Assembly: GCF_006345805.1 (NCBI RefSeq)
Contig: NC_043004.1
Span: 92,256,001 to 92,320,000 of the forward strand
Direction of reading: 5' to 3'
Origin: Octopus sinensis
Taxonomy: Eukaryota
Length of the DNA: 64,000 nucleotides
This document shows, piece by piece, positions 2,430-64,000 of this stretch (position 1 is its first letter; every line of letters starts with the position of its first letter). The translations under genes and the position numbers were made by a program. The notes below the pieces were generated by a model. That model did no database searches and was not told the DNA's origin. It was given only the letters and a program-made list of their open reading frames with translations.

Positions 2430-2504
2430 AATCTAAATATACTTTTGTTTTTTTCTGTTTTCAGGTAAGAAAATCTTTAACGTATTCCTTCACTTACGGT
2501 AAAT
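2430..2504 (+). promoter_or_regulatory. Candidate recursive splice site (AG 2463-2464 | GT 2465-2466) with a downstream secondary donor at 2499
   Basis: cttttgtttttttctgttttcag|gtaaga; branch-like ctaaat at 2433-2438; long pyrimidine run from ~2336; second donor acg|gtaaat 34 nt downstream. Confidence 0.55.
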
Positions 2505-6970: not shown

Positions 6971-7391
6971 ACTCTCTCTTTTACTCTTTTACTTGTTTCA
7001 GTCATTTGACTGCGGCCATGCTGGAGCACCGCCTTTAATCGAGCAAATCGACCCCGGGACCTATTCTTTTTGTAAGCCCAGTACTTATTCTATCGGTCTC
7101 TTTTGCCGAACCGCTAAGTAACGGGGGCGTAAACACACCAGCATCGGTTGTCAAGCAATGCTAGGGGAACAAACACAGACACACAAACAAACACACATAC
7201 ATATATATATATATATATACATATATACGACAGGCTTCTTTCAGTTTCCGTCTACCAAATCCACTCACAAGGCACTGGTCAGCCCGGGGCTATAGCAGAA
7301 GACACTTGCCCAAGATGCCACGCAGTGGGACTGAACCCGGAACCATGTGGTTGGTAAGCAAGCTACTTACCACACAGCCACTCCTGCGCCT
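6971..7391 (-). mobile_element. SINE family A, near full length (tRNA head, CORE-like block, internal microsatellite, LINE-like tail)
   Basis: The - strand begins GGCGCAGGAGTGGCTGTGTGG (A-box) with B-box GGTTCAGTCCC and cttgggcaagtgtcttct; (TA)/(TG) insert; ends GGCGGTGCTCCAGCATGGCC...(AAGAGTAA)n. Confidence 0.9.
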
Positions 7392-7645
7392 ATATATGTG
7401 TATACTTTGTGTACATGTTCGTGTACATATATGTGTATTTTAGACAGGGGAACACACGAATGCAGAATGCAAGATACACACATAAGCAGGTGGGAAAAAG
7501 AGAAGTAGAGAGAGAGTCTGGTTTAAACACTGTTACTTGGGAAAGAATAAAGAAATGAAAAAAAAAAACTTTGAAAATATAAAAAGATGAACAATAAACT
7601 ACTAGTGAAATGCTAAAAACATTTCACACACGGAAAGAGTGAGAA

Positions 7646-8394: not shown

Positions 8395-8870
8395 CATATT
8401 TTGGCACAGGGCCAGTAGTTTTTGAGGGCCAGTGGAAGTCAATTGCATCGACGCCAGTATACTTGACTGGTACTTATTTTATCGACTACGAAAGGATGAA
8501 AGGCAAATTCGACCACGGCGGAATTTGAACTCAGAACGTAAAGACAGTTGAAATACCTATTTCTTTACTACTCACAAGGGGCTAAACAAAGAGAGGACAA
8601 ACAAGGACAGACAAACGGATTAAGTCGATTATATCGACCCTGAAAAGATGAAAGGCAAATTCGACCACGGTGGAATTTGAACTCAGAACGTAAAGACGGA
8701 CGAAATACCTATTTCTTTACTACCCACAAGGGGCTAAACACAGAGAGGACAAACAAGGACAGACAAACAGATTAAGTCGATTGTATCGACCCCAGTGCGT
8801 AACTGGTACTTATTTAATCGACCCTGAAAGGATGAAAGGCAAAGTCGAATTCGACGGAATTTGAACTCAG

Positions 8871-8872
<2 letters not shown>
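8395..8872 (-). mobile_element. SINE family B head-to-tail multimer
   Basis: About three tandem units, with the junction gaaatacctatttctttactac at 8550 and 8702. Confidence 0.85.
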
Positions 8873-8901
<29 letters not shown>

Positions 8902-14306: not shown

Positions 14307-14968
14307 AAGGCGGAGAGCTGGCGAAATGCTTAGCGGTATTTCGTTTGTCTTTACGTTCTGAGTTCAAATTCCGCCGTGGTCGACTTTACCATTCATCCTT
14401 TCGGAGTCGATAAATTAAGTACCAGTTGCGTAGTGGGGTCGATCTAATCTACTGGTCCCCCTCCCCCAACATTCCGGCCTTGTGCCTAGAGTAGAAAAGT
14501 ATATATTATCAATCCGATTAAGATGGCGAGCTGCTAGAATCTTTAGCACGCCGGGCAAAATTCTAGCAGCATTTAGTCCGCCTTCAAGTTTTGAGCCCAA
14601 ATTCTACCGAAGTCGACGTAACCTTCCATCCTTTGGAGCTCGATAAAATAAATAGTAGTTGAACACTGGGGCCAATGTACTCGATTTACACCCTTCCTTA
14701 AAGTTGCTGGCCTTGTGCCAAAATTAGAAATCAATATAACAGTCCTTCGTAAGGCGGCGAGCTAGCAGAATCGCTAGTACGTCGAGCAAAATACTATCCA
14801 CCATTTCGACCTTCTTCACGTCCAGCATTCAAATTCCACCAAGGTCGACTTTGCCTTTCATCTTTTTGGGGTCGATAAACAAAGTATCAGTTGGGCACCG
14901 AAACCGATGTGATCCACTTACCCTCTCTTCCGAAATTGCTGGGATTTTGCCAAATTTGAAACCAATAT
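14307..14968 (+). mobile_element. Three consecutive SINE family B copies, each with its own head
   Basis: Heads at ~14307, ~14520 and ~14750; atatattatcaatcc(gatt) recurs at 14292, 14501 and 14965. Confidence 0.85.
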
Positions 14969-19660: not shown

Positions 19661-20629
19661 ATGTATATATACATGTATATATATATATGCATATAGATGT
19701 GTGTGTGCGTATATATATATGTGTGTGTATCAAAACAACAACAAAGCGGATATATACGAAAAATGGCTCAACCGGACCCCGTTAATCCTCCCACGTAAAT
19801 TCCAGTTCAAAGCTATTACAGAAGAACCTGAAACACAAAGACACCTCAGGGAGAGAATGGCACTGGAAAAAATGAAAATGGAAATAGAACTTCTGAAATT
19901 GAGGGCCCAAACGAATGAGGATAAAATAAAATCCACCGATGAAGATATCAACGAAGAAATTCGCAAAATGACCCAAGGCCCAGATCAAGAGAAGTTCTCC
20001 AAACTATGGAAAGAGGACTGTGAAAAAGAAGAACTAAAATCTCTCCAACGCTGGGAGAAAAGCGCCACTTGGTTCTCAGACTATGAAGCCGTCTTTCAAA
20101 CAGAGCACGCCTCCAACAACCCTTTCCAGAAAATAAGAAAACCAAAACAACACCCAAACACCGATACACACCTGTCTAAAAATCGGAACCTTCACTACTA
20201 TCAAAAAAAGAATACAGGACCTAACCCTAACTCTGTAAGCAGCCAGCGATACAATATCAGGAATACCCCCACTTCAAGCAGAGAAAGGATAAATCAACAC
20301 CCACAGCATAGACACTGCAACCTCATCCCCACCCAAAGGAGTTACCAACGAAATCTTCGTCCCACATTAACCGGTTAAACAACCATGCACAACAAACCCA
20401 CACCACTTGCAATGATTACCAACGAAGGCCTCCTAGAACACCACACCCGAATATGGGATATCGGGATGCTCTCCTCAATACTGCTCCAAGAACACACACC
20501 ATAAATCACAACAGGAGACCCCTAATCAACAAAGAACAACTATATACTAGCTACCATCCCAACCACCGCATTCATTTTTTAGACCCAATACGCAAACACA
20601 GAGACACAAGATAGCACCAAACAAGCAGG

Positions 20630-22900
20630 AGGAACCAAAAGTAATAAAAATTATTAATCTAACTCACAAGGAACTAACAGCAAACCAAATAAACATACTT
20701 TCCAAAGGACTTAAGTTTACACCCACCCCACAACACCCCAACTACAATGAAATGAAAGAAGACATCGCAGAATTCTGCAGAAAATTAAGACTTACTGAGG
20801 AGCTATACGATAAATACAACGAGGACGAATCGTTAGCCAGAATAGGAGTAACTACACCCCCTCGAAAGGTAAGAATAAAACACTTGATGATTTCTGTGAC
20901 CACATATCAAATTACCCATATCAACATATGCACAAACAAAAACACAAACCAAACTTCAGCAAAAAAGAATGGGCTGAGTTGAACAAATTAAAACTAGATA
21001 AAACAATAACAATCAAAGAGGCCGATAAAGGGAGTGCTGTTGTCTTAATGGATACGACATTTTACATAACTTTGGTACTTTCTATGCTGGAAGACACAAC
21101 ATACTGTGAAAAGGCACAAAACTACAGTCAACAAAAAATAATGAGGGAACTAAAATCCATATTAAACCCATACAAAGCAGGGCTCACCGACAAAGAATAT
21201 GATTATATGACCAATTTCACAAGTAAAACTAGCCAATTCTACGGTATACCTAAGATCCACAAAAGTGAAAAAATAAGCAACGCATGCAAGATAGCTACAG
21301 ACATAATAATTAAAGTCCCTAATCCTAATGACCTCAAATGAGACCCATAATAGCAGGTCCCGCATGCGAAACCCACCGCCTCAGTAACTTTTTAGACACC
21401 CTGTTAAAACTACTCCTCAAACATGTCAAAAGCTATATAAGGGACGACTTAGATATGCTCAATCACCTACCGAATACTATAAACAAAAACACCATACTGT
21501 ATCCTTCGATGTAGTCAACCTCTACTCCAATATCCCCCACAACCTAGGACTAGAGGCAATCCAATTCTGGCTAGAGAATCACGCCAACGAACTACCACAC
21601 CGCATCAAAAAAGAATTTGTGATAGAAGGGGTTAAATTCATCCTGGAATAAACTTCTTCGCCTTCAATGACAACTTCTACCGACAAAAATCGGGGACTGC
21701 GATGGGTACACGAATGGCCCCCTCCTTTGCCAACCTAGTCATAGGATACCTAGAGATCAGTCTGTATCGTAAGGTTCTAGAAAGATATGGCAGCCCTTTC
21801 TCCATCTACATAGAAAACAACTGGAAGAGATATCTAGATGACTGTTTCATCCTTTGGCATAAAAATATAGAAAAACTCATAGAATTCCAGAAAATTTTAA
21901 ACGGACTGGACGTAAACATCCAATTCACGATGGAATATAGCCAACAACAACTCCCCTTCCTCGATATCCTCATTAAGAAAGCTAATAATATAATAGAAAC
22001 AGACATATACTATAAGCCTACAGACTCTAAGCAATATCTTCCATTCAATTCATGCCACCCCAGACACACCAGGATGAATATCCCCTTCAATCTAGCAAAA
22101 AGGATATGCACTATAGTCTCTAACGCAAACACCAGAGACACACGACTACAAGAACTAAAAGATACCCTAATCACCAGGAACTATCCACCTTCACTTATTG
22201 ACAAGTGCATTCAACGTGCCCTTCAACTTAACATCAAGGAACTGAGACATCCCAAATCAAAGAAAAACTTACAACCAAAAGCCTTACCATACATCTCCAC
22301 ACACAACCCTCTCAATAACGAAGCCTTCGACACCATCCTCCACAACATACCCCTCCTAAAAAAAGACCACAGAATGAACACAATCCTCCAAACACACACG
22401 ATCATAAAAAGCAAAAGACAGCCTAGATCCATGAAAAGTCTCCTTACACAAGCCCGAATTCACTCTTCAACACAGAAGCCGACAGTAAAAAAATGTGGAA
22501 GACCCAATTGCGGGATATGCGACTATCTAATTGAGGGCTCAGAGTTCTCCTTCAAACAGGGACAACGGTTTACAGTGAAAAGCAACTTCACATGTGCTTC
22601 GGAGAACCTAATATACTCACTAACCTGCTCCGGGTGTCAAGAGCAGTGCATAGGCCAAACAAAAATGGTTTGCGTAAACGAATGGCCCTGCACAGATCCC
22701 AGATAAAAATTCCCCAAAACAGAAAAATAGCTTTTAGCCAACACATAGATACTTGCGCCAACAAAAAAAACACCAAACTTCAGAATTTTCCCCCTCTACC
22801 AATTTAGGGACGATACAACCTCGAGACAACGAATAAGTAAAGAAAATCTCTTATTACAAAATACAAGCCACTTCTTAACGGGTCTACGACAAACAATTAA
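20630..22900 (+). pseudogene. Disrupted Penelope RT + GIY-YIG endonuclease ORF
   Basis: ORF-track pieces 20752-20982, 20928-21341, 21702-22706 and 22592-22807 join across frameshifts and stops into one PLE polyprotein. Confidence 0.88.
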
Positions 22901-35445: not shown

Positions 35446-35855
35446 GCTGGCAGAAACGTTAGCACGCCGGGCGAAATGCTTAGCGGTATTTTCGTCTGCC
35501 GTTACGTTCTGAGTTCAAATTCCATCGATGTCGACTTTGCTTTTCATCATTTCGGGGTCGATAAATCAAGTACCAGTGACGCACTGGGGTCGATGTAATC
35601 GACTTAATCCCTTTGTCTGTCCTTGTTTGTCCCCTCTGTGTTTAGCCTCTTGTGGGTAGTAAAGAAATAGGTATTTCGTCTGCCGTTACGTTCTGAGTTC
35701 AAATTCCGCCGATGTCGACTTTGCCTTTCATCATTTCAGGGTCGATAAATTAAGTACCAGTTACGCACTAGGATCGATGTAATCGACATAATCCCCTTGT
35801 CTGTCCTTGTTTGTCCCCTCTATGTTTAGCTCCTTGTGGGCAATAATGAAATAAG
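35446..35855 (+). mobile_element. SINE family B dimer
   Basis: A-box ctggcagaaacgttagc and B-box gttcaaattcc; central gtcgactttgcctttcatc...gtcgataaattaagtaccag (Meta-domain-like, from recall); second unit joined through gtagtaaagaaataggtatttcgtc. Confidence 0.9.
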
Positions 35856-37323
35856 CGGACAGAAGCTCTATGATGATCGGTGCTGCCTAAAGTGCAACAG
35901 AATTTTTTATCATGTTGTTTACCATAATGTTTAATAGGTAAAACTGTCAGCAAGTGATGGAATTGGGGAGAAATTCGTTATGTTAGGTGAGGAGCATTTA
36001 ATCATCAACATTTAGACTATTTTGGTAGAAGGCAATGTTCATTTCTATATAAAATCTAATTGAGAACCTAGAGAACTCTTTATCTAACTAGTGTCTAAAA
36101 GACACATACTGATTGTTCATTTCTACATTGGCGTATTCAGAAGATCCAATAGGTATGTATGGAGCAGGTATTCTATGATTTCGCATATGGACTAACCACT
36201 TGGTCCCCTCATGCATCTAAAATGCAATTCTAGTTTCAAGTACTAAATAACATGACTTTCCCTGAAAAGTACTGAACGCACTAATACAATCCTGGTGTAC
36301 TGACCCACTCGAGGCACAGGCAATTGTTCGCTTATATCTGTTTATATCCAGTACCATGGGTAAACAAAACGAGTGGAGATTATAGGGACAAATTTATAAA
36401 AATAGAGGTTTACAATAGAGGTTTACAAAACTGAGTACGAGAAACGAGACATGAAAATATCACAGTGTAAACGGAAGTGGAATTAGTCGTTCCAACATGG
36501 AGGCAATTTCTTGAAACCTTCACGGAACCATCATGGAACTTTACAGGTCCCAAATTGATCTAATGGCTAAAATTAAGCGCCCTCTACAAGATGTGTTTGA
36601 CCTTTATGTACGCAGTGAGCAGGCCAATTCTGTGAGGTCATATAAGGTGCTCTTTTCAACTTTTCAAAAAAATTACAGGACGACAGAAGTTACCTTTCTA
36701 CCCACATTTTTTATTCCAAATCGAAATGAAGAGGAAGAAAGGAAAAAGAGAAGAGAAAACAGGGAGAGGAAGGCCAAAAGTAATAAAAAATAACAACAGC
36801 TATATTAATGATGAAGAAGATGGTAAAGATGAAGATGATAATAATGGTGATGATGGTGAGGATAATTGGCACAACTATTGGGCGTTAAAAGGGTTACCGT
36901 CTAAATATATTTATTATCCGACAAAGTAGCAACACCCGATACATAAATATGAACTTGCCAAATTTCGTGTTATGAAAAGTCCTAATCGAAACGCATAGAC
37001 ACACATTGATACACTCCACAGAGAGAGAGGGGGGGGGAGAAATGCAAACACATACAAGTGTACAAAAGCACACACACTGGTACACATACACATACAAACA
37101 CGGAAAGGTAAACACGCGCACATATACACAGGCGTACGCATGTATATGTGTGGAAAGATAAATATGGAAATAAATATATAGATATATAAGAGAAACAATA
37201 TTGTAACAAATATGGAAGTAAACAAGATACATGTGTGTATGTATATGTGTGCGTGGTAATATATATATATATATGTGTGTGTGTATATATATGTATATAT
37301 ATATGTGTGCGTGTATATATATG

Positions 37324-43427: not shown

Positions 43428-44236
43428 TGGTGGAGGTGGTTGTGGTTGTGGTGGTGGTGATGGTGGTGGTGGTTGTGGTGGTGGTGGTTGTGGTGGTGGT
43501 GGTAGTGGTGGTGGTGGTGATGGTGGTGGTGGTCGTCGTCGTCGTCGTGTTGTTTGTGGTTGTGATGGTGGTGGTGGTGGTTGTTGTAGTGGTGGTGGTG
43601 GTGGTGGTGGTTGTGGTGGTGGTGATGGTGGTGGTGGTGGTTGCGGTGGTGGTGGTGGTGGTGTTTGTGGTTGTGGTGGTGGTGTTTGTGGTTGTGGTGG
43701 TGGTGGTGGTGGTGGTGGTGGTTGTGGTGGTGGTGGTAGTGGTGGTGGTGGTGGTGTTTGTGGTTGTGGTGGTGGTGATGGTGGTGGTGTGGTGGTGGTG
43801 GTGGTGGTGGTGTTTGTGGTTGTGGTGGTGGTGGTTGTGGTGGTGGTGGTTGTGGTGGTGTGATGGTGGTGGTGGTGTTGCGGTGGTGGTGGTGGTGTTT
43901 GTGGTTGTGGTGGTGGTGTTTGTGGTTGTGGTGGTGGTGATGGTGGTGGTGGTTGTGGTGGTGGTGGTAGTGGTGGTGGTGGTGGTGTTGTGGTTGTGGT
44001 GGTGGTGATGGTGGTGGTGGTGGTTGCGGTGGTGGTGGTGGTGTTGTGGTTGTGGTGGTGGTGTTTGTGGTTGTGGTGGTGGTGATGGTGGTGGTGGTTG
44101 TGGTGGTGGTGGTAGTGGTGGTGGTGGTGGTGTTTGTGGTTGTGATGGTGGTGATGGTGGTGGTGGTGGTGGTGGTGGTGGTGGTGGTGGTGGTGGTGAT
44201 GCTTGTGGTGGTGATGGTGGTGGTGGTCGTCGTCGT
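43428..44236. repeat. ~810 bp imperfect (GGT)n array with higher-order periodicity
   Basis: GGT units interrupted by TGT, AGT, GAT and GTTTGT in recurring order; contains frameshifts. Confidence 0.95.
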
Positions 44237-45720: not shown

Positions 45721-45939
45721 TTACTCTTTTACTCTTTTACTTGTTTCGGTCATTTGACTGCAGCCATGCTGGAGCACCGCCTTTAGTCGAGCAAATCGAC
45801 CCCAGGACTTATTCTTTGTAAGCCCAGTACTTATTTTATCGGTCTCTTTGCCGAACCGCTAAGTGACGGGGACGTAAACACACCAGCATCGGTTGTCAAG
45901 CAATGCTAGGGGGACAAACACAGACACACAAACATATAC

Positions 45940-45972
<33 letters not shown>

Positions 45973-46143
45973 CATATATACGACAGGCTTCTTTCAGTTT
46001 CCGTCTACCAAATCCACCCACAAGGCATTGGTCGGCCCGGGGCTATAGCAGAAGACACTTGCCCAAGATGCCACGCAGTGGGACTGAACCCGGAACCATG
46101 TGGTTGGTTAGCAAGCTACTTACCACACAGCCACTCCTGCGCC
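45721..46143 (-). mobile_element. SINE family A, near full length
   Basis: Same architecture as 6971-7391 and highly similar in sequence. Confidence 0.92.
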
Positions 46144-47226
46144 TATGTGGAAAAGAACAATGGTTTCCTGCGCGATAAATTTGTCCAAAAATTGTGAGAA
46201 GACAATTTTTAAAGATTAATTTTGTGACAATTATATAATAGTTACTTCTTTGTGACTACGGGGTGGGTATAAGCATGATGTTGTTTTTATGTATTTCTAG
46301 AATTGAGGTGTATTCAGTGATAGGGGCTAGCTGATTTTGTAATTTTATGTATGCGTTATTAGGTTTCAGTCGTGTGGTTTCTCAGAGTATCTCTTATGAA
46401 GTTACAATATCAGTAAATTCTGTAGTTTTAAAACTAAAGAAAAAGAATCCACATTCTCTCAAAAGAAAGGTTAGATAGAGCCCTGGCAAAAGTGGGATCC
46501 AACATGTGCTCGCTCAACCGAGCAATGTTTAGAGAAGCGGGTGGTTCTTCCTGAAGAACCAGGATCATGTGAAGAGATAGTACAACTAGAGCGACATAGC
46601 CGTTATGGGACTGGTAACGCAGAGCAAGTCTCAAGAGTAAGTAGATTCTGGATCACAAGTAGAAATATTTTCACAAGCATTGATACTTGACATTTTGCCA
46701 CCTTAGCAAAAGTACAGATATGGGATGAGCATGGAGGTGGTTCGTAACAAAATGCAGTCGGTTGGAGACTGCATAACGTATAGGTCCTAATAAGTTCCAA
46801 AGACCACCACACTATCCAGGAGCTCTATATTCCATAAGGCATCAGAAATAAAGTAGGACAATCGAACTGGTAATGCAAGGCAGTATGAACTGTTGCTAGA
46901 CACGTGGCAGAACTTGCTATTTGAGTGTCATTTTTCGTAGACTGACAAAAAAACACTTAGAAGTAAAAATTTGACAGCAGATAATTGAAGGAGTACCAAT
47001 AGCAATATCCCCCATTGTGCCGCAGAGACAAAGACTGTTTGTGCTGGTTGTGTTGAGTGAAAAGGAGGGGGTGAACAAGAAAGAGTTTTGTGCTTGGTAA
47101 ACTGTTAAGTATTGATCCATTCATCAAGTAATGGCGTAAGCTTCTGGTTCAATAGCTACTTACTGAAGTGACTAAATTTGGTCGCAAATTCTGAGTGCGT
47201 GCTGGTGTGTGTGTATGTGTGAGCAC

Positions 47227-48089: not shown

Positions 48090-49003
48090 CAATATACTCG
48101 CCATTTGCTTCAACTACGGCTTCCAGACGACTTTGGAAATTACTGCAACTCCTTTGGACGGTCCCCTCGTTTAAGTTGATGAATTTCTGACATAATCCTT
48201 GCCTTCAGTTCATCTTTGGTGTTACAAGGACCTTTCTAGATCTCTTGCTCAACTGAGCCCCGCACATAATACTCAAGGGGCTTGCAGTCTGATTAGTTAG
48301 ATGGCCAGATGATAAGAGTGATGTGGTCGCACAAATTATCTGACAGCCATGACTGGGTCCTCCTGCTCGTGTGCCATGGTGCAGAGTCCTGTTGCTAGAC
48401 GTAAGGTCTTCCAGCAGCCATCCTCTTGACCCAGGACAGCACTACCTCCTCCAGGCGCTGTGTTGAGTCTGAGGCCGTATGGGAAGATGAATGGAGGCAT
48501 AACTTGCCATCATTGGTCATCACTCCAAACACCATGATGTTGACTGAATGTTCGATTTTTATTATTCTCGGTATTTGTTTTGGGGACACGACAAGCCAAA
48601 AGTTGTTCTGTGTGTTTATCATCTGATCCTCGCAGAAATTTTTCTCGTTTGAGAAAAACAAAGGAATGTTCGGTTTGAGGGGATGCTTGAGTTTGTTCAA
48701 AACCTTCGTAGCGGGGTCTTTCCTCTTGTCCCTGATGCCTTGGGATAAAAACTGGCCTTTTCTCATCTTGTATAACGAATACTGAATGTCTTCATGCACT
48801 ACCTGCCTGATAAGAAACTCAGACACTCCTTGTCCTTCGCGATGGACCTGATTGACTTGGAAGGATCGTTGTTAATCACGACCTGGATCTCTCCAACAAA
48901 TTAAGCAGTTCGTTTCTTATCAGAACGATCAGAGTGAGTTTTCCGAGCTACCATTTTGTATTGAAAATATGAAATGGCGACAATTTATTCATCACACCCT
49001 GTA
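48090..49003 (-). mobile_element. Decayed Tc1/mariner (maT-like, DD37 spacing) transposon
   Basis: The - strand translates FFSNEKNF...MVFGVM...QQDSAP-(37 aa from D)-SDCKPLEY; the end at 49001 reads TA|CAGGGTGTGATG; the opposite end is degenerate (tcgccattt at ~48098). Confidence 0.85.
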
Positions 49004-49341: not shown

Positions 49342-50354
49342 TGTACATTTATGTGTGTGTGTGTGTGTATGTGTGTGTACGTATGTATGTTCATATGTAT
49401 GTGTGTCTGAGTTTATATGTATGAATAAAAGTTCTCTCTTAGAGGTACATAACAGAAAAATTAGGCGTTGGTAATGTGACTATTTTCATTTATTCATATC
49501 ATAAATAAATAAGATAGAATTATGGTAGAATCTGCCTTTGTGCGTTAATCTTTGTCTCTGCTAAGAACAGAGTGGTCACATATTTTTATATTTTGCTGTG
49601 CTGTAGCTCGTTATAGGCTAGACATCAAGCTTATGTGGCAAGTTAATTTTTTTTTTTGTGAAATGAAATCTTGAAGTTAAAGAATTTTGTGTTAACAGAC
49701 TTTTAAAAAAAATTGTCTTTGACTACGTGTCTCTATTTGGATTTGTTTCAACTTTCGTTGAAATCACCGCCAGTAGTTGTTTAACACATTTAACTCTCTA
49801 CAAATATATTTGCTATAAAGGCAAAAATATTAGAGGCTAATATAAACTGGATAAGCGAATTTGCATTTTGAACAGTTACTTGACAGCGAGATTAACCAGC
49901 AAACTATTGATGTTTAAACAGTGTTTTGTTTCATTGTTGCAATGCAGTACAGGACATATTTACAGATTTAGTACTGTAAGTTACAACGAATTTAAACAAT
50001 ACGTCTACAAAATGTTCGTCGGCAGAAATAGAGAGAACTGATGTACATACATTTCGACCCTTGTTGGTGTCATCGTCAGTAACTGAGCACGACCGCCAAC
50101 TAGCCACAAGCACATCGCTTATAAACCGACTTATATTAATGTTCGACCTCACTACCATTAAAATACAACGTCGTGTATAACATACGGTAAGCTTGACGAC
50201 TGAAGTTTTAGCTTCAATTTCCTCTGAAACTTCAATTTCCTCTGCGATAGGCATACTTCCTATCCAAGGTGACATTATATTTTTAAACATTTGAATGGAA
50301 AACATTAAATTGAAAAAAAAAAGAAATAATTCAATGACTTTGAATAATTTATTT

Positions 50355-50513
50355 GTACTAAATGTTTTAATGTTTTTTTTTTCTTCTCTTTCTCTTTTAG
50401 GTAAGTCATATGCTTTTGTTTAAATACAATTCTGCGCTGCTGAGAATGGGAATAGACAACAAAATGATGAAATCAGTACTATAAAAAAAATGAAGAAAAT
50501 CAAACAGGTATTT
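50355..50513 (+). promoter_or_regulatory. Candidate recursive splice site (AG 50399-50400 | GT 50401-50402) with a secondary donor at 50508
   Basis: tactaaa branch-like motif at 50356-50362; tgtttttttttttcttctctttctcttttag|gtaagt (consensus acceptor and consensus donor); caaacag|gtattt 107 nt downstream. Confidence 0.65.
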
Positions 50514-51660
50514 TCACGACAATCATCATTGTTATGTCTATCTTAATTATTTGATTTCAATAATTTCATATGAACTTTCACTGAACTACCAACGTAAACC
50601 TCCATGTTCCTGTTTTATGGGTGGCTTTGGTTGCGTTTCATGTAGCCATTTCTTGGGTTGTGTTCTTGTGTAAATGTGTCAAGTCGGAAGTATTTTATTT
50701 TATTTTATTAATAGACATTCTTTATCGTACCTACTTCAGCGATTATTATGGCTGCCATTTATATTCTCTTCTGTCAGATTTCCATTTGAAGGTCTTCATA
50801 TTTTGTTAATTTATAAACGCATAGTTTAAGAGATTTTCAGATTCTTTCCGTGCAATATGTTGGTCTCTCATATCTGATAATGTTATCTAAGACCTGGTCT
50901 TGATCAGTCTGGATAGGTATACTTTTGATTATCATAATGATTTTGATTCTGATAACATGACTGTCACAATCTGAATGTGATGTATGCTTACCCTATTTAC
51001 TCTTAGTATCTAAGTTGTAGTCACATTGTTACTTTGTTGAAAAAGCAACCTAACGGTCATATCTGTTGATATATTGTCTTCGCAAATGCCGGAGAGCCAG
51101 AAAGGATGTGGTCAATATTTTCTTTCTGTAATTCTCATAATATGTAACATATTTTAATATCTTGTTTCATTAATGGGACATTAAATGGTAGAATTGGTAG
51201 CGTGTCGGACGAAATATTACGTAGTATTAAATTATATTTTTTTTATATTCTAGAAGTTGCCTTTCATCCACACTGGATCGATAAACTAAAATATCATTCC
51301 AGGACAGGGATCGATCAAATCGTCCATTTCTCTATTACGAAATGTGCTTTAGAAAAAAAAGTAATTACTTTTATGTAAAGCTGTGCGTTAGCAGAAACGG
51401 TAGAGTGTCAGACGATATTCCATGCATGCTCCTTTGCTCTCATTTCACAGACTTCTGGAGTCAAGTTACTATCCGTCTTCCGAGAGTCGATGAGATAATT
51501 AGCATTGATATAATAAAACCAATCCAATTAACTCTTCCCCCACCACACTCACACACACACACACACACACAAACACACAAACATGCACGAATGAGTGAAC
51601 AAACGAAAGAAAATTTTGACAGGAGATGCATATATTATTTAATGACAGTTGATTAGGTTC

Positions 51661-59259: not shown

Positions 59260-60880
59260 TATTATTTTATTCTTTTATTATTTTACACATTTCAGCCCTA
59301 ATGTTGTGGCCATGCTGGAGCACCGCCAGTGTAATCACCTTTTCAATGGCCAATCTTATGTGATTGTCGTTCGGTGAAGGAGGGAGTTCAACACTGCTGC
59401 CCTCTTTTGAATCACCCGCCTTGATATTGGTTAATCTGGGACCTTGGATATCAGGAGGCCAAGCTGTTTCTTGTCCCACTCCATGAAGGTCCTGCAAATG
59501 TTTTAGCAAGTCGGTAAATAGCCGTGGGTCCTTGAATCCCAAACTATTGCAGCAAATAATCCTCACTCTAGATGAGATAGCTGGGACCTTTAGAACAGTG
59601 CAGTGACGTCCAGTTCGATACCAAAACTCCTCCAGGCTCTTTCATACCTCTCCCGTCTTCGCTCCAGAGAGTAGGGTCGTAGTTATTTCAGTTTCCTCCC
59701 AGTAGCTCAGTTGTTCCATTGATGCGATCTTTTTTGTATAACATTGCTGAACTGCCTCAAGTTCCGTTATTAATCTGACACTGTAAGGTGACCACATTTG
59801 AGAGCAGTAGTCCAGATGGCTGAAGACAAATGTCCTCAGTTGAACCGTATATTTTACTTGTCCCCTGTTCTGAAGGTTCACAGAATCCATCCAGCCATTC
59901 GCCTGCACGCTGCCACCATCTTGGTGATATGCATGTGAAACAAAGCATCGTTGCTCATATCAATCCCGAGATCATACACTGTACGTGATTCTGGATTTGC
60001 CGCACCTTTTGGTCCAAAGTATCGTTGTTGCGACCTGTGAACACCAATTAGCTGATAGCAGAGGGCTTGAAATTTGCCTGCATTAAATTGCATGTTGTTA
60101 TCCTCAGCCCATTTATATATGGCATCTAGGTCATTCTGCCGAAGATTAGCATCAGAAGGTCCCTTGACTGTTTGTTCTAGTTTTGTGTCATGGACATAGC
60201 TAGTAATTATGGCTGTCTGTGTAACTGATGGCATGTCTGAAAGAGCCACGATGAACAACGGCTCCAATACAGTTCACTAAGGCACTCTGCTTTCTATTAC
60301 TGTCTCCATGGAGACGACTCCATTGGCTACCTCCATTGGCTATTTAAGAAGTCATGCAATCACTTTCCAAGTTTTCTGGCTATGTCAAGTCTCCGTAGCT
60401 TGTGACATCCTATGATCAACTTTATCAAAAGCCTTTCCAAAGTCAAGATACATCACATCCACGTTTGAGAGATTCCTTAATTGTTTCATCACCCAGTTAT
60501 AGTGCTGCAAAAGTTGTGTAAGGCAGCTTCTTCCTGAGCAAAAGCCATCTTGGGTGTCAGGAGGTAAGTCATTATCTTCAAGGAACGTAATGTGTTTCTT
60601 CCTGACAATGTGATCCATGATTTTGTTGACATGGGAGGCTAGAGAGGCAGGTCTGTAATTTTTGGTATCTGCTCTGCTACCTCCCTTATGCTTTTCTTTA
60701 ACATTTTGGGGGGAAGTTTCCCTGTTATGAAGAAGCTCTGAAAGAGAATCTGAAGTGGTCTTGATAGAATCCCTTTGTGTTATTTTAGGAGGATTGATGG
60801 GAATCCATCAGGGCCTATAGTCGAGCTGTAGCTCATTTCATTATTGATCGATATCACGCCTGTCTTCTCTGTTTTCATGG
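59260..60880 (-). mobile_element. CR1-clade LINE, 3' ~1.6 kb with disrupted RT
   Basis: QDGFCSGRSCLTQLL...MYLDFGKAFDKVDH, SYVHDTKL (YADD position), DLDAIYKWAEDNNMQFNAGKF, RTFVFSHLDYCSQMWSPY; the 3' end carries GGCGGTGCTCCAGCATGGCCAC. Confidence 0.9.
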
Positions 60881-63324: not shown

Positions 63325-63510
63325 CAGGCCGCGAGCTGGTAGAATCATTAGCACTCCGGGCAAAATGCTATACCGGCATATCTTCCGTCTTTACATTCTA
63401 AGTTCATATTCCGCCGAGGTCGACTTTGCCTTTCATTCTTTCTGGGCCGATAAAATAAGCACAAGTGAAATCCCCCTTCCCCCAAATTTCAGTTCTTGTG
63501 CCTTTAGTAG
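63325..63510 (+). mobile_element. SINE family B monomer
   Basis: gcgagctggtagaatcattagc...ttccgccgaggtcgactttgcctttcatt...cttgtgcctttagtagaaag. Confidence 0.75.
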
Positions 63511-63615
63511 AAAGATTTATTATATTTATTATATTTATGGTACATAATTTTATTTACTTTACCAAGATAGCTCTCTATGTAGTCACTAAAACCTGTTAAA
63601 ATTAACAGGCACTAA

Positions 63616-64000
63616 GGTGGCGAGCTGGCAGAAACGTTAGCACGCCGGGCTAAATGCGTAGCCGTATTTCGTCTGTCGCTACGTTCTGAGTTCAGGTTCC
63701 GCCGAGGTCGACTTTGCCTTTCATCCTTTCGGGGTCGATTAAACAAGTACCTATTACGCACTGGGGTCGATATAATTGACTTAATCCGTTTGTCTGTCCT
63801 TGTTTGTCTCATTTGTGTTTAGCCCATTGTGGGTAGTAAAGAAATAGGTATTTCGTCGGCCGCTATGTTCTGAGTTCAAATTCCGCCGATGTCAACTTTG
63901 CCTTTCATCCTTTTGGGGTCGATAGATTAGGTACCATTTATGCACTGGGTCGATATAATCGACTTAATCCGTTTGTCTGTCTTTGTTTGTCCCTTCTGTG
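63616..64000 (+). mobile_element. SINE family B multimer, running off the window end
   Basis: Full head, then the junction gtagtaaagaaataggtatttcgtc at ~63833-63857, then a second unit. Confidence 0.9.

What the first reader, a model, noticed from the sequence alone, without database searches (positions are those of the whole stretch)
50355..50513. Textbook-like recursive splice site (zero-length exon) with a downstream cryptic donor
Seen: branch-like TACTAAA (50356), a ~28 nt U/C tract, TAG, then immediately GTAAGT, so a consensus acceptor abuts a consensus donor. A second donor (CAG|GTATTT) 107 nt downstream brackets a purine-rich segment, and the site lies in ~1.7 kb (about 49450-51150) without microsatellites or young SINEs. 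Established: this AG|GT architecture with a short cryptic exon defines ratchet points in long Drosophila introns and RS-exons in long vertebrate neuronal introns. Inference: this window is a giant + strand intron removed stepwise. I am not aware of recursive splicing being characterised in cephalopods or molluscs, but cannot verify that.
Basis: partly seen in the sequence, partly recalled or inferred. Interest (0 to 1): 0.8.

Follow-up and report, generated by a model that had tools for sequence, protein, structure and literature searches.

The report
Candidate recursive splice sites, octopus DNA
Two spots 48 kb apart on the same strand of this octopus-like DNA each put a near-perfect intron end directly against a near-perfect intron start, which is what a giant intron removed in stages should show, but nothing here could show that the region is transcribed or that the sites are used.

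Summary
TACTAAA lies at 50356-62, an uninterrupted 26-nt pyrimidine tract at 50373-98, then TAG|GTAAGT (AG 50399-400, GT 50401), and a weak donor CAG|GTATTT at 50508.

It is not a routine chance match. On a generic splice-site matrix this acceptor ranks first of 6,830 AGs on both strands. The donor abutting it ranks fifth of 4,048 GTs on the + strand.

A second site of the same design lies at 2463/2465 on the same strand. Both score 21-24 bits; the next-best AG|GT on either strand scores 15. Permuting contexts among the 316 AGGT sites gives P about 0.002-0.01.

Both sites carry the sequence hallmarks of Drosophila ratchet points: TT at -5/-6, a branch-like A near -30, and a short cryptic exon ending in a weaker donor. 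The 107-nt one has stops in every frame; neither length is a multiple of three.

The functional half of the claim is untested. I found no host-gene exon, no strand asymmetry, no orthologous DNA and no RNA data. The giant + strand intron therefore remains an inference.

I put genuine recursive splicing at about 0.45. If real, it is a new member of a known kind in an unstudied lineage.

The parts
50356..50362 (+). Branch-point-like TACTAAA. The putative branch A at 50361 lies 40 nt before the first base after the acceptor.
   Evidence: This is a motif match only, and it lies slightly outside the -36 to -21 range reported for fly ratchet points.
50367..50371 (+). Alternative branch-like TTAAT, with A at 50370 (-31)
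   Evidence: Read. The position matches the -30 peak of mapped fly recursive branch points. This is a prediction, not a mapped branch.
50373..50398 (+). Uninterrupted 26-nt pyrimidine tract, with TT at -5/-6
   Evidence: 20/20 Y before NAG. TT at -5/-6 is present in 196 of 197 fly ratchet points.
50399..50400 (+). AG of the putative recursive acceptor
   Evidence: Its 3' splice-site PWM score of 15.5 bits ranks first of 6,830 AGs on both strands. A 75-nt AG-free zone lies upstream.
50401..50406 (+). GTAAGT, the donor that would be regenerated after splicing to 50400 (ratchet-point donor)
   Evidence: Matches all six intronic positions of the donor consensus. It ranks fifth of 4,048 GTs on the + strand, with an intronic-only score of 8.8 bits.
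50401..50507 (+). Putative cryptic RS-exon of 107 nt
   Evidence: Stops in all three frames, and the length is not a multiple of 3. It is 63% purine overall and 75% in the last 65 nt. The only donor scoring above 4 bits within 250 nt closes it.
50508..50513 (+). Weaker downstream donor CAG|GTATTT (RS-exon donor)
   Evidence: Scores 5.9 bits in full and 1.9 bits intronic-only, against 8.8 for the ratchet-point donor.
2432..2438 (+). Branch-like TCTAAAT upstream of the second site (A2436 at -29)
   Evidence: Read. Motif only.
2442..2464 (+). Second acceptor: a pyrimidine-rich tract (18/20 Y, TT at -5/-6) ending in CAG
   Evidence: Its 3' splice-site score of 14.0 bits ranks third of 3,533 on the + strand and sixth on both strands.
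2465..2470 (+). GTAAGA donor abutting the second acceptor
   Evidence: Ranks third of 4,048 GTs on the + strand. The combined AG|GT score is 21.2 bits against 15.05 for the next best on either strand.
2465..2504 (+). Putative 34-nt cryptic exon (2465-2498) plus its weaker donor ACG|GTAAAT (2499-2504)
   Evidence: The donor scores 6.4 bits, and 4.7 intronic-only against 7.25 for the ratchet-point donor. It is the only donor above 2 bits within 250 nt.

Best explanation
The junctions at 50400|50401 and 2464|2465 are recursive splice sites, that is ratchet points with a short cryptic RS-exon. They would lie in a very long intron of a + strand gene in an Octopus-like genome.

Proposed mechanism, inferred from the fly and vertebrate model:
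1. As polymerase passes each site, U2AF and U2 bind the long U/C tract and the branch A.
2. U1 at the weak downstream donor (50508 or 2499) helps define a short exon.
3. The upstream exon is ligated to 50401 (or 2465).
4. This recreates exon|GTAAGT, a donor much stronger than the downstream one, so the next step splices from it.
5. The 107-nt (or 34-nt) cryptic exon is thereby discarded and no trace remains in the mRNA.

The intron would be removed in pieces, one of them about 48 kb long.

Shown: the sequence architecture and its statistical rarity. Inferred: transcription of the + strand, intronic location and actual use.
For: - The acceptor at 50399 ranks first of 6,830 AGs. The one at 2463 ranks third on the + strand. 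The abutting donors rank fifth and third of 4,048 GTs.
- Combined AG|GT scores are 24.3 and 21.2 bits. The next best on either strand is 15.05, and the best in 63 kb of other octopod DNA is 18.0.
- Among the 316 AGGT sites, these two have the best two upstream contexts, and their downstream contexts rank second and eighth. Permutation gives P=0.0096, 0.0035, and 0.0019 for the same strand.
- Both sites are on one strand, 47.9 kb apart. Fly recursive segments span 2.6-63.6 kb.
- Both have TT at -5/-6, as do 99.5% of fly ratchet points.
- A branch-like A lies at -31 and at -29, near the fly peak at -30.
- Each site is followed by a short cryptic exon closed by a clearly weaker donor. The 107-nt one has stops in every frame, and neither length (107, 34 nt) is a multiple of three. 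This matches the RS-exon description in PMC8605326.
- Neither site lies in a repeat found elsewhere in the window or in other octopod loci.
Against: - There is no evidence that the + strand is transcribed or that the window is intronic. No host exon is detectable.
- TA/GC skew, AATAAA and GTAAGT/GTGAGT counts show no strand asymmetry.
- Conservation, a hallmark of fly ratchet points, could not be tested.
- In a multi-gigabase, T-tract-rich genome, my chance rate of about 0.05 sites per 64 kb implies on the order of a thousand or more such motifs by chance genome-wide (inference). A single motif is therefore weakly predictive.
- In vertebrates only a handful of fully suppressed intronic sites are firmly established.
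They are not trained on octopus and are not MaxEntScan.
- The P values are computed within the window, after a reader had already picked the site.
Confidence: 0.45

Rival explanations
1. Chance juxtaposition. A T/C-rich low-complexity tract of a kind common in this genome happens to be followed by AGGTAAGT, in DNA that is untranscribed or transcribed from the other strand. The second site is a second coincidence. Neither has a function.
For: - The window has 990 positions with at least 18/20 pyrimidines, and 286 with 20/20. Acceptor-like tracts are therefore plentiful.
- There is no sign of + strand transcription, no exon and no strand asymmetry.
- Weaker AG|GT sites show no + strand excess: 10 against 17 at 14/20 Y or better.
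- Genome-wide, chance alone should give many such motifs (inference).
Against: - Two such sites on one strand are expected in roughly 1 window in 300-1000.
- The two best acceptor contexts among the 316 AGGT sites coincide with the second- and eighth-best donor contexts.
- No comparable site occurs on the - strand or in 63 kb of other octopod DNA.
- Both sites also carry TT at -5/-6, a branch-like A near -30 and a weaker downstream donor.
Confidence: 0.35
2. An ordinary alternative, poison or non-coding exon. Positions 50401-50507 would form a real 107-nt cassette exon, or an exon of a long non-coding RNA or UTR, that appears in mature transcripts. The GTAAGT at its start would be incidental or would serve as an alternative donor. 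This is equivalent to an 'expressed RS-exon'.
For: - A top-ranked acceptor is paired with a usable donor 107 nt downstream.
- The 3' two-thirds is purine-rich and GAA-rich, like an exonic enhancer.
- Expressed RS-exons exist in flies and are the commoner form in mammals.
Against: - Stops occur in all three frames, and 107 is not a multiple of 3.
- The flanking ORF has no protein or Pfam similarity.
- A real exon beginning with GTAAGT by accident is improbable. Two in one window, with 2465 starting GTAAGA, is more improbable still.
- The donor at the exon start is far stronger than the one at its end, 8.8 against 1.9 bits. In fly mutagenesis this predicts skipping.
Confidence: 0.12
3. By-product of an old retroposon on the - strand. 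The T/C tract would be the reverse complement of a degenerate A/G-rich 3' tail, creating an acceptor-like tract in the way antisense Alu tails do in primates. The AG|GT would be accidental.
For: - On the - strand the tract reads AAAAGAGAAAGAGAAGAAAAAAAAAA.
- The window is full of SINE, LINE and Penelope copies.
- SINE copies themselves carry near-consensus acceptors.
Against: - The would-be element body (50401 onward) has no copy elsewhere in the window or in 63 kb of other octopod DNA.
- No AATAAA precedes the tail on the - strand.
- This reading explains neither the consensus donor nor the second site, whose tract is not tail-like.
Confidence: 0.05

Closest known systems
Drosophila intronic ratchet points (zero-nucleotide recursive splice sites; Ubx, kuz, luna, Bx, cpo; Hatton 1998, Burnette 2005, Duff 2015, Joseph 2018/2021)
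   Same: - A long pyrimidine tract with TT at -5/-6, then YAG|GTAAGT or GTAAGA.
- A branch-like A near -30.
- A short cryptic exon closed by a weaker donor, with a length that is not a multiple of three.
- Two sites on one strand 48 kb apart, within the reported segment sizes.
   Different: - Use, intronic location and conservation are all unverified here.
- The cryptic exons are 107 and 34 nt, against a typical ~50 nt in flies.
- The host is a spiralian with a genome of a very different size and repeat load, so the motif alone is far less predictive than in flies.
Vertebrate RS-exons in long neuronal introns (Sibley 2015; Blazquez 2018; Boehm 2018; from my own knowledge and as summarised in PMC8605326)
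   Same: - An AG|GT junction recognised by exon definition through a downstream donor.
- A cryptic or poison exon whose inclusion depends on competition between the regenerated and the downstream donor.
- Association with very long introns.
   Different: - Vertebrate sites are mostly expressed RS-exons. Only about nine fully suppressed intronic sites were firmly noted.
- Their motifs are generally less extreme than the near-perfect fly-like consensus seen here.
- The host gene and tissue are unknown for this window.
Antisense-retroposon-derived cryptic acceptors (e.g. Alu exonisation in primates; from my own knowledge)
   Same: A long U-rich tract followed by AG in repeat-rich intronic DNA.
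   Different: No repeat could be found at either site. Exonised tails do not normally carry a consensus donor fused to the AG.

Membership tests
Intronic ratchet point / zero-nucleotide recursive splice site | 3' splice site directly fused to a 5' splice site (AG|GT with a consensus donor) | tested here: met
   TAG|GTAAGT at 50398-50406 and CAG|GTAAGA at 2462-2470. Their combined scores are outliers on both strands.
Intronic ratchet point / zero-nucleotide recursive splice site | Prominent pyrimidine tract with TT at -5/-6 (196 of 197 fly sites) | tested here: met
   20/20 and 18/20 pyrimidines. T50395-T50396 and T2459-T2460 occupy -6/-5.
Intronic ratchet point / zero-nucleotide recursive splice site | Branch point used about 21-36 nt upstream | tested here: inconclusive
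   Motif candidates only: TTAAT with A at -31 and TACTAAA with A at -40 at the first site, and CTAAA with A at -29 at the second. No lariat data are available.
Intronic ratchet point / zero-nucleotide recursive splice site | Cryptic RS-exon closed by a downstream donor weaker than the regenerated one, generally out of frame | tested here: met
   The 107-nt segment has stops in all frames. Donor scores are 8.8 against 1.9 bits at the first site. The 34-nt segment gives 7.25 against 4.7 bits. This holds at sequence level only.
Intronic ratchet point / zero-nucleotide recursive splice site | Lies on the sense strand inside a long intron (over ~10 kb) of an expressed gene | not testable with these tools
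   No exon was found in 64 kb. There is no strand asymmetry. The window's flanks and annotation could not be reached.
Intronic ratchet point / zero-nucleotide recursive splice site | Junction reads from the upstream exon, saw-tooth nascent coverage and recursive lariats | not testable with these tools
Intronic ratchet point / zero-nucleotide recursive splice site | Core motif conserved well above its flanks in related species | not testable with these tools
   Neighbouring ORFs have no orthologous copy on record. An exact 30-mer is absent from the metagenome contigs.
Conventional coding cassette exon | Open reading frame, usually frame-preserving, with protein similarity | tested here: not met
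   Stops occur in all three frames and 107 is not divisible by 3. Nearby ORFs have no homologues or Pfam domains.
Interspersed repeat (SINE, LINE or DNA transposon) carrying the motif | Further copies of the flanking sequence elsewhere | tested here: not met
   The stretches 49400-51300 and 2255-2815 have no significant copies in the rest of the window. The only matches are a 60-nt hit at E=0.001 and a low-complexity hit at 2589-2709. There are no copies in L001-L003, which do share other repeats with the window. The sample is limited and no repeat library was available.
U1 snRNA gene or pseudogene on the - strand (ACTTACCT) | Match to the U1 covariance model | tested here: not met
   No Rfam family reaches its gathering score anywhere in the window. 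The sequence after ACTTACCT is A/G-rich and not U1-like.

The most novel reading that the evidence does not exclude
Octopods process giant introns by fly-style constitutive recursive splicing at near-consensus zero-nucleotide ratchet points, and this window holds two consecutive ones 48 kb apart. That would be the first case outside insects and vertebrates and the first in Spiralia. It would imply either an ancestral bilaterian mechanism or convergent recruitment as cephalopod introns expanded.
Probability: 0.4. Interest if true: 0.6.

Novelty: new member of a known kind. Interest (0 to 1): 0.4.

Why it matters
In the literature I could search, recursive splicing has been documented in Drosophila, mouse and human. 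No held paper treats it in cephalopods or other molluscs.

Cephalopods combine very large, repeat-rich genomes with complex nervous systems. How they splice introns of tens of kilobases accurately is therefore a real question.

Two fly-like ratchet-point candidates with exact coordinates make that question directly testable with existing kinds of data: total RNA-seq, lariat reads and cross-species alignment. A positive result would show whether the fly-type consensus (TT at -5/-6, suppressed cryptic exon) is ancestral or convergent.

If the sites are unused, the finding is an ordinary motif coincidence.

Tried and rejected
- **Orthologous DNA or the window's own record.** The 124-aa ORF next to the site (49931-50305, - strand) has no exact record and no homologue.
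- **Penelope-like ORF.** The intact ORF at 21702-22706 has a best match of only 56-68%, in Argonauta hians and Octopus vulgaris, with no window-encoded entry.
- **Tc1/mariner remnant.** The remnant 1.5 kb upstream of the site has a best match of 47%. No orthologous locus could be fetched.
- **Exact 30-mer across the junction.** Absent from the metagenome contigs.
- **Host exons.** I tried ORF lists, stop-free segments ranked by amino-acid composition, acceptor-donor pairs with open frames, and Pfam on 20 candidate segments. Only transposon remnants appeared.
- **Transcription strand from sequence.** TA and GC skews after masking repeats, and counts of AATAAA, ATTAAA and GTAAGT/GTGAGT per strand, showed no asymmetry.
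- **Structured RNA or a U1 gene.** No Rfam hits.
- **Repeat origin.** No significant copies in the window or in L001-L003.
- **The 'repeat-free island' as evidence of constraint.** Rejected, because gaps of that size occur elsewhere in the window.
- **Sense versus antisense enrichment in annotated octopod introns.** Not feasible, because only transposon-anchored loci of about 21 kb could be fetched.

Full report
**The observation.** The + strand at 50340-50520 reads ...tgTACTAAAtgttttaatg-T10CTTCTCTTTCTCTTTT-AG|GTAAGTcatatg...caaaCAG|GTATTTtc.
- TACTAAA lies at 50356-62.
- A pure pyrimidine run lies at 50373-98. It is 26 nt, not 28.
- AG is at 50399-400 and GTAAGT at 50401-06.
- The second donor has its GT at 50508, which is 107 nt downstream.
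- No AG occurs between 50324 and 50398.
- The 107-nt segment has stops in all three frames.
- It is 63% purine overall and 75% in its last 65 nt.

**Is it more than chance?** I scanned both strands for at least 14/20 pyrimidines followed by NAG|GTRAG. There are two sites, both on the + strand, at 2463/2465 and 50399/50401.

The window has 990 positions with at least 18/20 pyrimidines and nine AGGTRAG heptamers. If tract and heptamer were independent, about 0.05 such sites would be expected per window (my arithmetic). Markov-chain simulations give 0.005-0.01.

I then scored every AG and GT with generic metazoan splice-site matrices. They are not trained on octopus and are not MaxEntScan. The results are:
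- The acceptor at 50399 is the best of 6,830 AGs on both strands.
- The acceptor at 2463 is third on the + strand.
- The donors that abut them rank fifth and third of 4,048 GTs.
- Their combined AG|GT scores are 24.3 and 21.2 bits. The next best on either strand is 15.05.

In 63 kb of other octopod DNA (Octopus vulgaris and Argonauta hians loci L001-L003) the best score is 18.0 bits.

A permutation re-pairs upstream and downstream contexts among the window's 316 AGGT sites, so it keeps the real abundance of pyrimidine tracts. It reaches the top score in 0.96% of trials. It reaches the second score in 0.35%, and does so with both on one strand in 0.19%.

The pattern is therefore unlikely by chance within this window. 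The P values are post hoc, because a reader had already chosen the site. My chance rate also implies many such motifs by chance across a multi-gigabase genome.

**The second site.** At 2430-2504 the sequence is aaTCTAAATatacttttgtttttttctgttttCAG|GTAAGAaaatctttaacgtattccttcacttACG|GTAAATtac. It has the same design:
- a branch-like A at -29;
- TT at -5/-6;
- a strong donor fused to the acceptor;
- a weaker donor 34 nt downstream, scoring 4.7 against 7.25 bits intronic-only.

Beyond this shared design the two sites show no similarity to each other. They are not copies of one element.

**Context.** The window is 36.5% G+C and dense with microsatellites. It also carries these elements:
- tRNA-derived SINEs;
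- a Penelope-like element whose ORF best matches Argonauta hians and Octopus vulgaris proteins;
- a Tc1/mariner remnant;
- a LINE reverse-transcriptase remnant.

Two repeats are 93% identical to a repeat on an O. vulgaris chromosome. The source is therefore an Octopus-like octopod.

The stretches around both sites, 49400-51300 and 2255-2815, have no significant copy elsewhere in the window. They also have no copy in the other octopod loci. I cannot attribute the motif to an interspersed repeat, though I had no repeat library.

I found no exon of a host gene:
- Long ORFs are microsatellite translations or transposon remnants.
- The best acceptor-donor pairs have no open frame.
- Twenty candidate segments give no Pfam domain except reverse transcriptase.

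Nothing in the sequence tells which strand is transcribed. After masking repeats, TA skew is -0.013 and GC skew is +0.008. AATAAA counts are 83 against 72, and GTAAGT counts are 16 against 17.

**What could not be tested.** Conservation and expression are the decisive criteria, and neither was reachable.
- The ORF beside the site has no exact record or homologue.
- The nearby transposon ORFs have no orthologous copy on record.
- An exact 30-mer is absent from the metagenome contigs.
- The representative-library search does not accept pooled segments.

**Mechanism proposed.** If the + strand is part of a pre-mRNA, an acceptor of this strength with a 75-nt AG-free zone should be used. The weak donor at 50508 would support exon definition. 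Ligation of the upstream exon to 50401 recreates exon|GTAAGT. That donor should outcompete GTATTT, so the 107-nt segment is removed with the next intron piece.

This is the ratchet-point and RS-exon model established by mutagenesis at fly Bx and kuz. There, weakening the regenerated donor switches the outcome to inclusion of the cryptic exon (PMC8605326). The same logic applies at 2465. Every step here is inferred from sequence.

**Comparison with known systems.** Fly ratchet points have these reported features:
- They lie in introns of 11-133 kb.
- They divide those introns into segments of 2.6-63.6 kb.
- They use branch points mostly at -36 to -21.
- They carry TT at -5/-6 in 196 of 197 cases.
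- They are more conserved than other AG|GT sites (bioRxiv 10.1101/006163).

Every sequence-level feature is met here. Location, use and conservation are untested.

Vertebrate recursive sites work by the same logic, but they are mostly expressed RS-exons. Only about nine fully suppressed intronic sites were firmly noted. How common silent sites are in a large-genome animal is therefore uncertain. This is the main reason for caution.

**Novelty.** No held paper has recursive splicing in cephalopods, octopus or molluscs as its subject. A 2026 review lists only Drosophila, mouse and human. If real, these would be new members of a known kind in an unstudied lineage, not a new mechanism.

**Verdict.** I take the within-window chance probability as about 0.003. 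I take the chance that a recursively spliced giant intron shows two such sites as about 0.3. The posterior then depends on the fraction of the genome lying in such introns:
- 0.1%, as in vertebrates, gives about 0.1.
- 1% gives about 0.5.
- 5%, as in flies, gives about 0.8.

These figures are my inference. I settle on about 0.45 for genuine recursive splice sites. I give about 0.35 to coincidence, 0.12 to an ordinary non-coding or poison exon, and 0.05 to a retroposon-tail by-product.

Interest is moderate.

Noticed in passing
window 2430-2504 (+): A second recursive-splice-like junction, CAG|GTAAGA at 2464|2465. It has a branch-like CTAAA at -29 and a weak donor 34 nt downstream.
   Followed up: yes
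window 20551-22844 (+): A Penelope-like retroelement with an intact 334-aa ORF at 21702-22706. Its relatives carry RVT_1, GIY-YIG and HTH_animal domains. The best matches are 56-68% identical, in Argonauta hians and Octopus vulgaris. The DNA is 70% identical to an O. vulgaris copy.
   Followed up: partly
window 48143-48871 (-): A frameshifted Tc1/mariner-type transposase remnant 1.5 kb upstream of the site. Its best protein match is 47%.
   Followed up: partly
window 59270-60807 (-): A LINE reverse-transcriptase remnant spread over several frames. RVT_1 scores 28.2 bits, just under the Pfam cut-off. The + strand motif GAG|GTAAGTCAT at 60562 lies inside it in antisense and has no pyrimidine tract.
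   Followed up: partly
window 8466-8873 (-), 14335-14891, 35486-35956, 63375-63938 (+): tRNA-derived SINE copies, often as tandem pairs or triplets 184-288 nt apart. Their sense strand carries TTTCATCCTTTCAG|G. This ranks among the best acceptors of the window, at 8825 and 12386 on the - strand, so the SINE is a ready source of cryptic acceptors.
   Followed up: no
window 43428-44227: An (TGG)n microsatellite of about 800 bp (268 units, 81% matches). It dominates the local GC skew.
   Followed up: no
window 6982-7392 and 45730-46145; L001 6692-7098: A repeat of about 410 bp that is 93% identical to a copy on Octopus vulgaris chromosome OX597819.1. This is the best clue to the source taxon.
   Followed up: partly
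window 50249-50400 (+): A further acceptor-like site about 150 nt upstream of the junction scores 10.2 bits. Paired with the GTAAGT donor it would form a 150-nt pseudo-exon with no open frame and 21% G+C. It is probably incidental.
   Followed up: no
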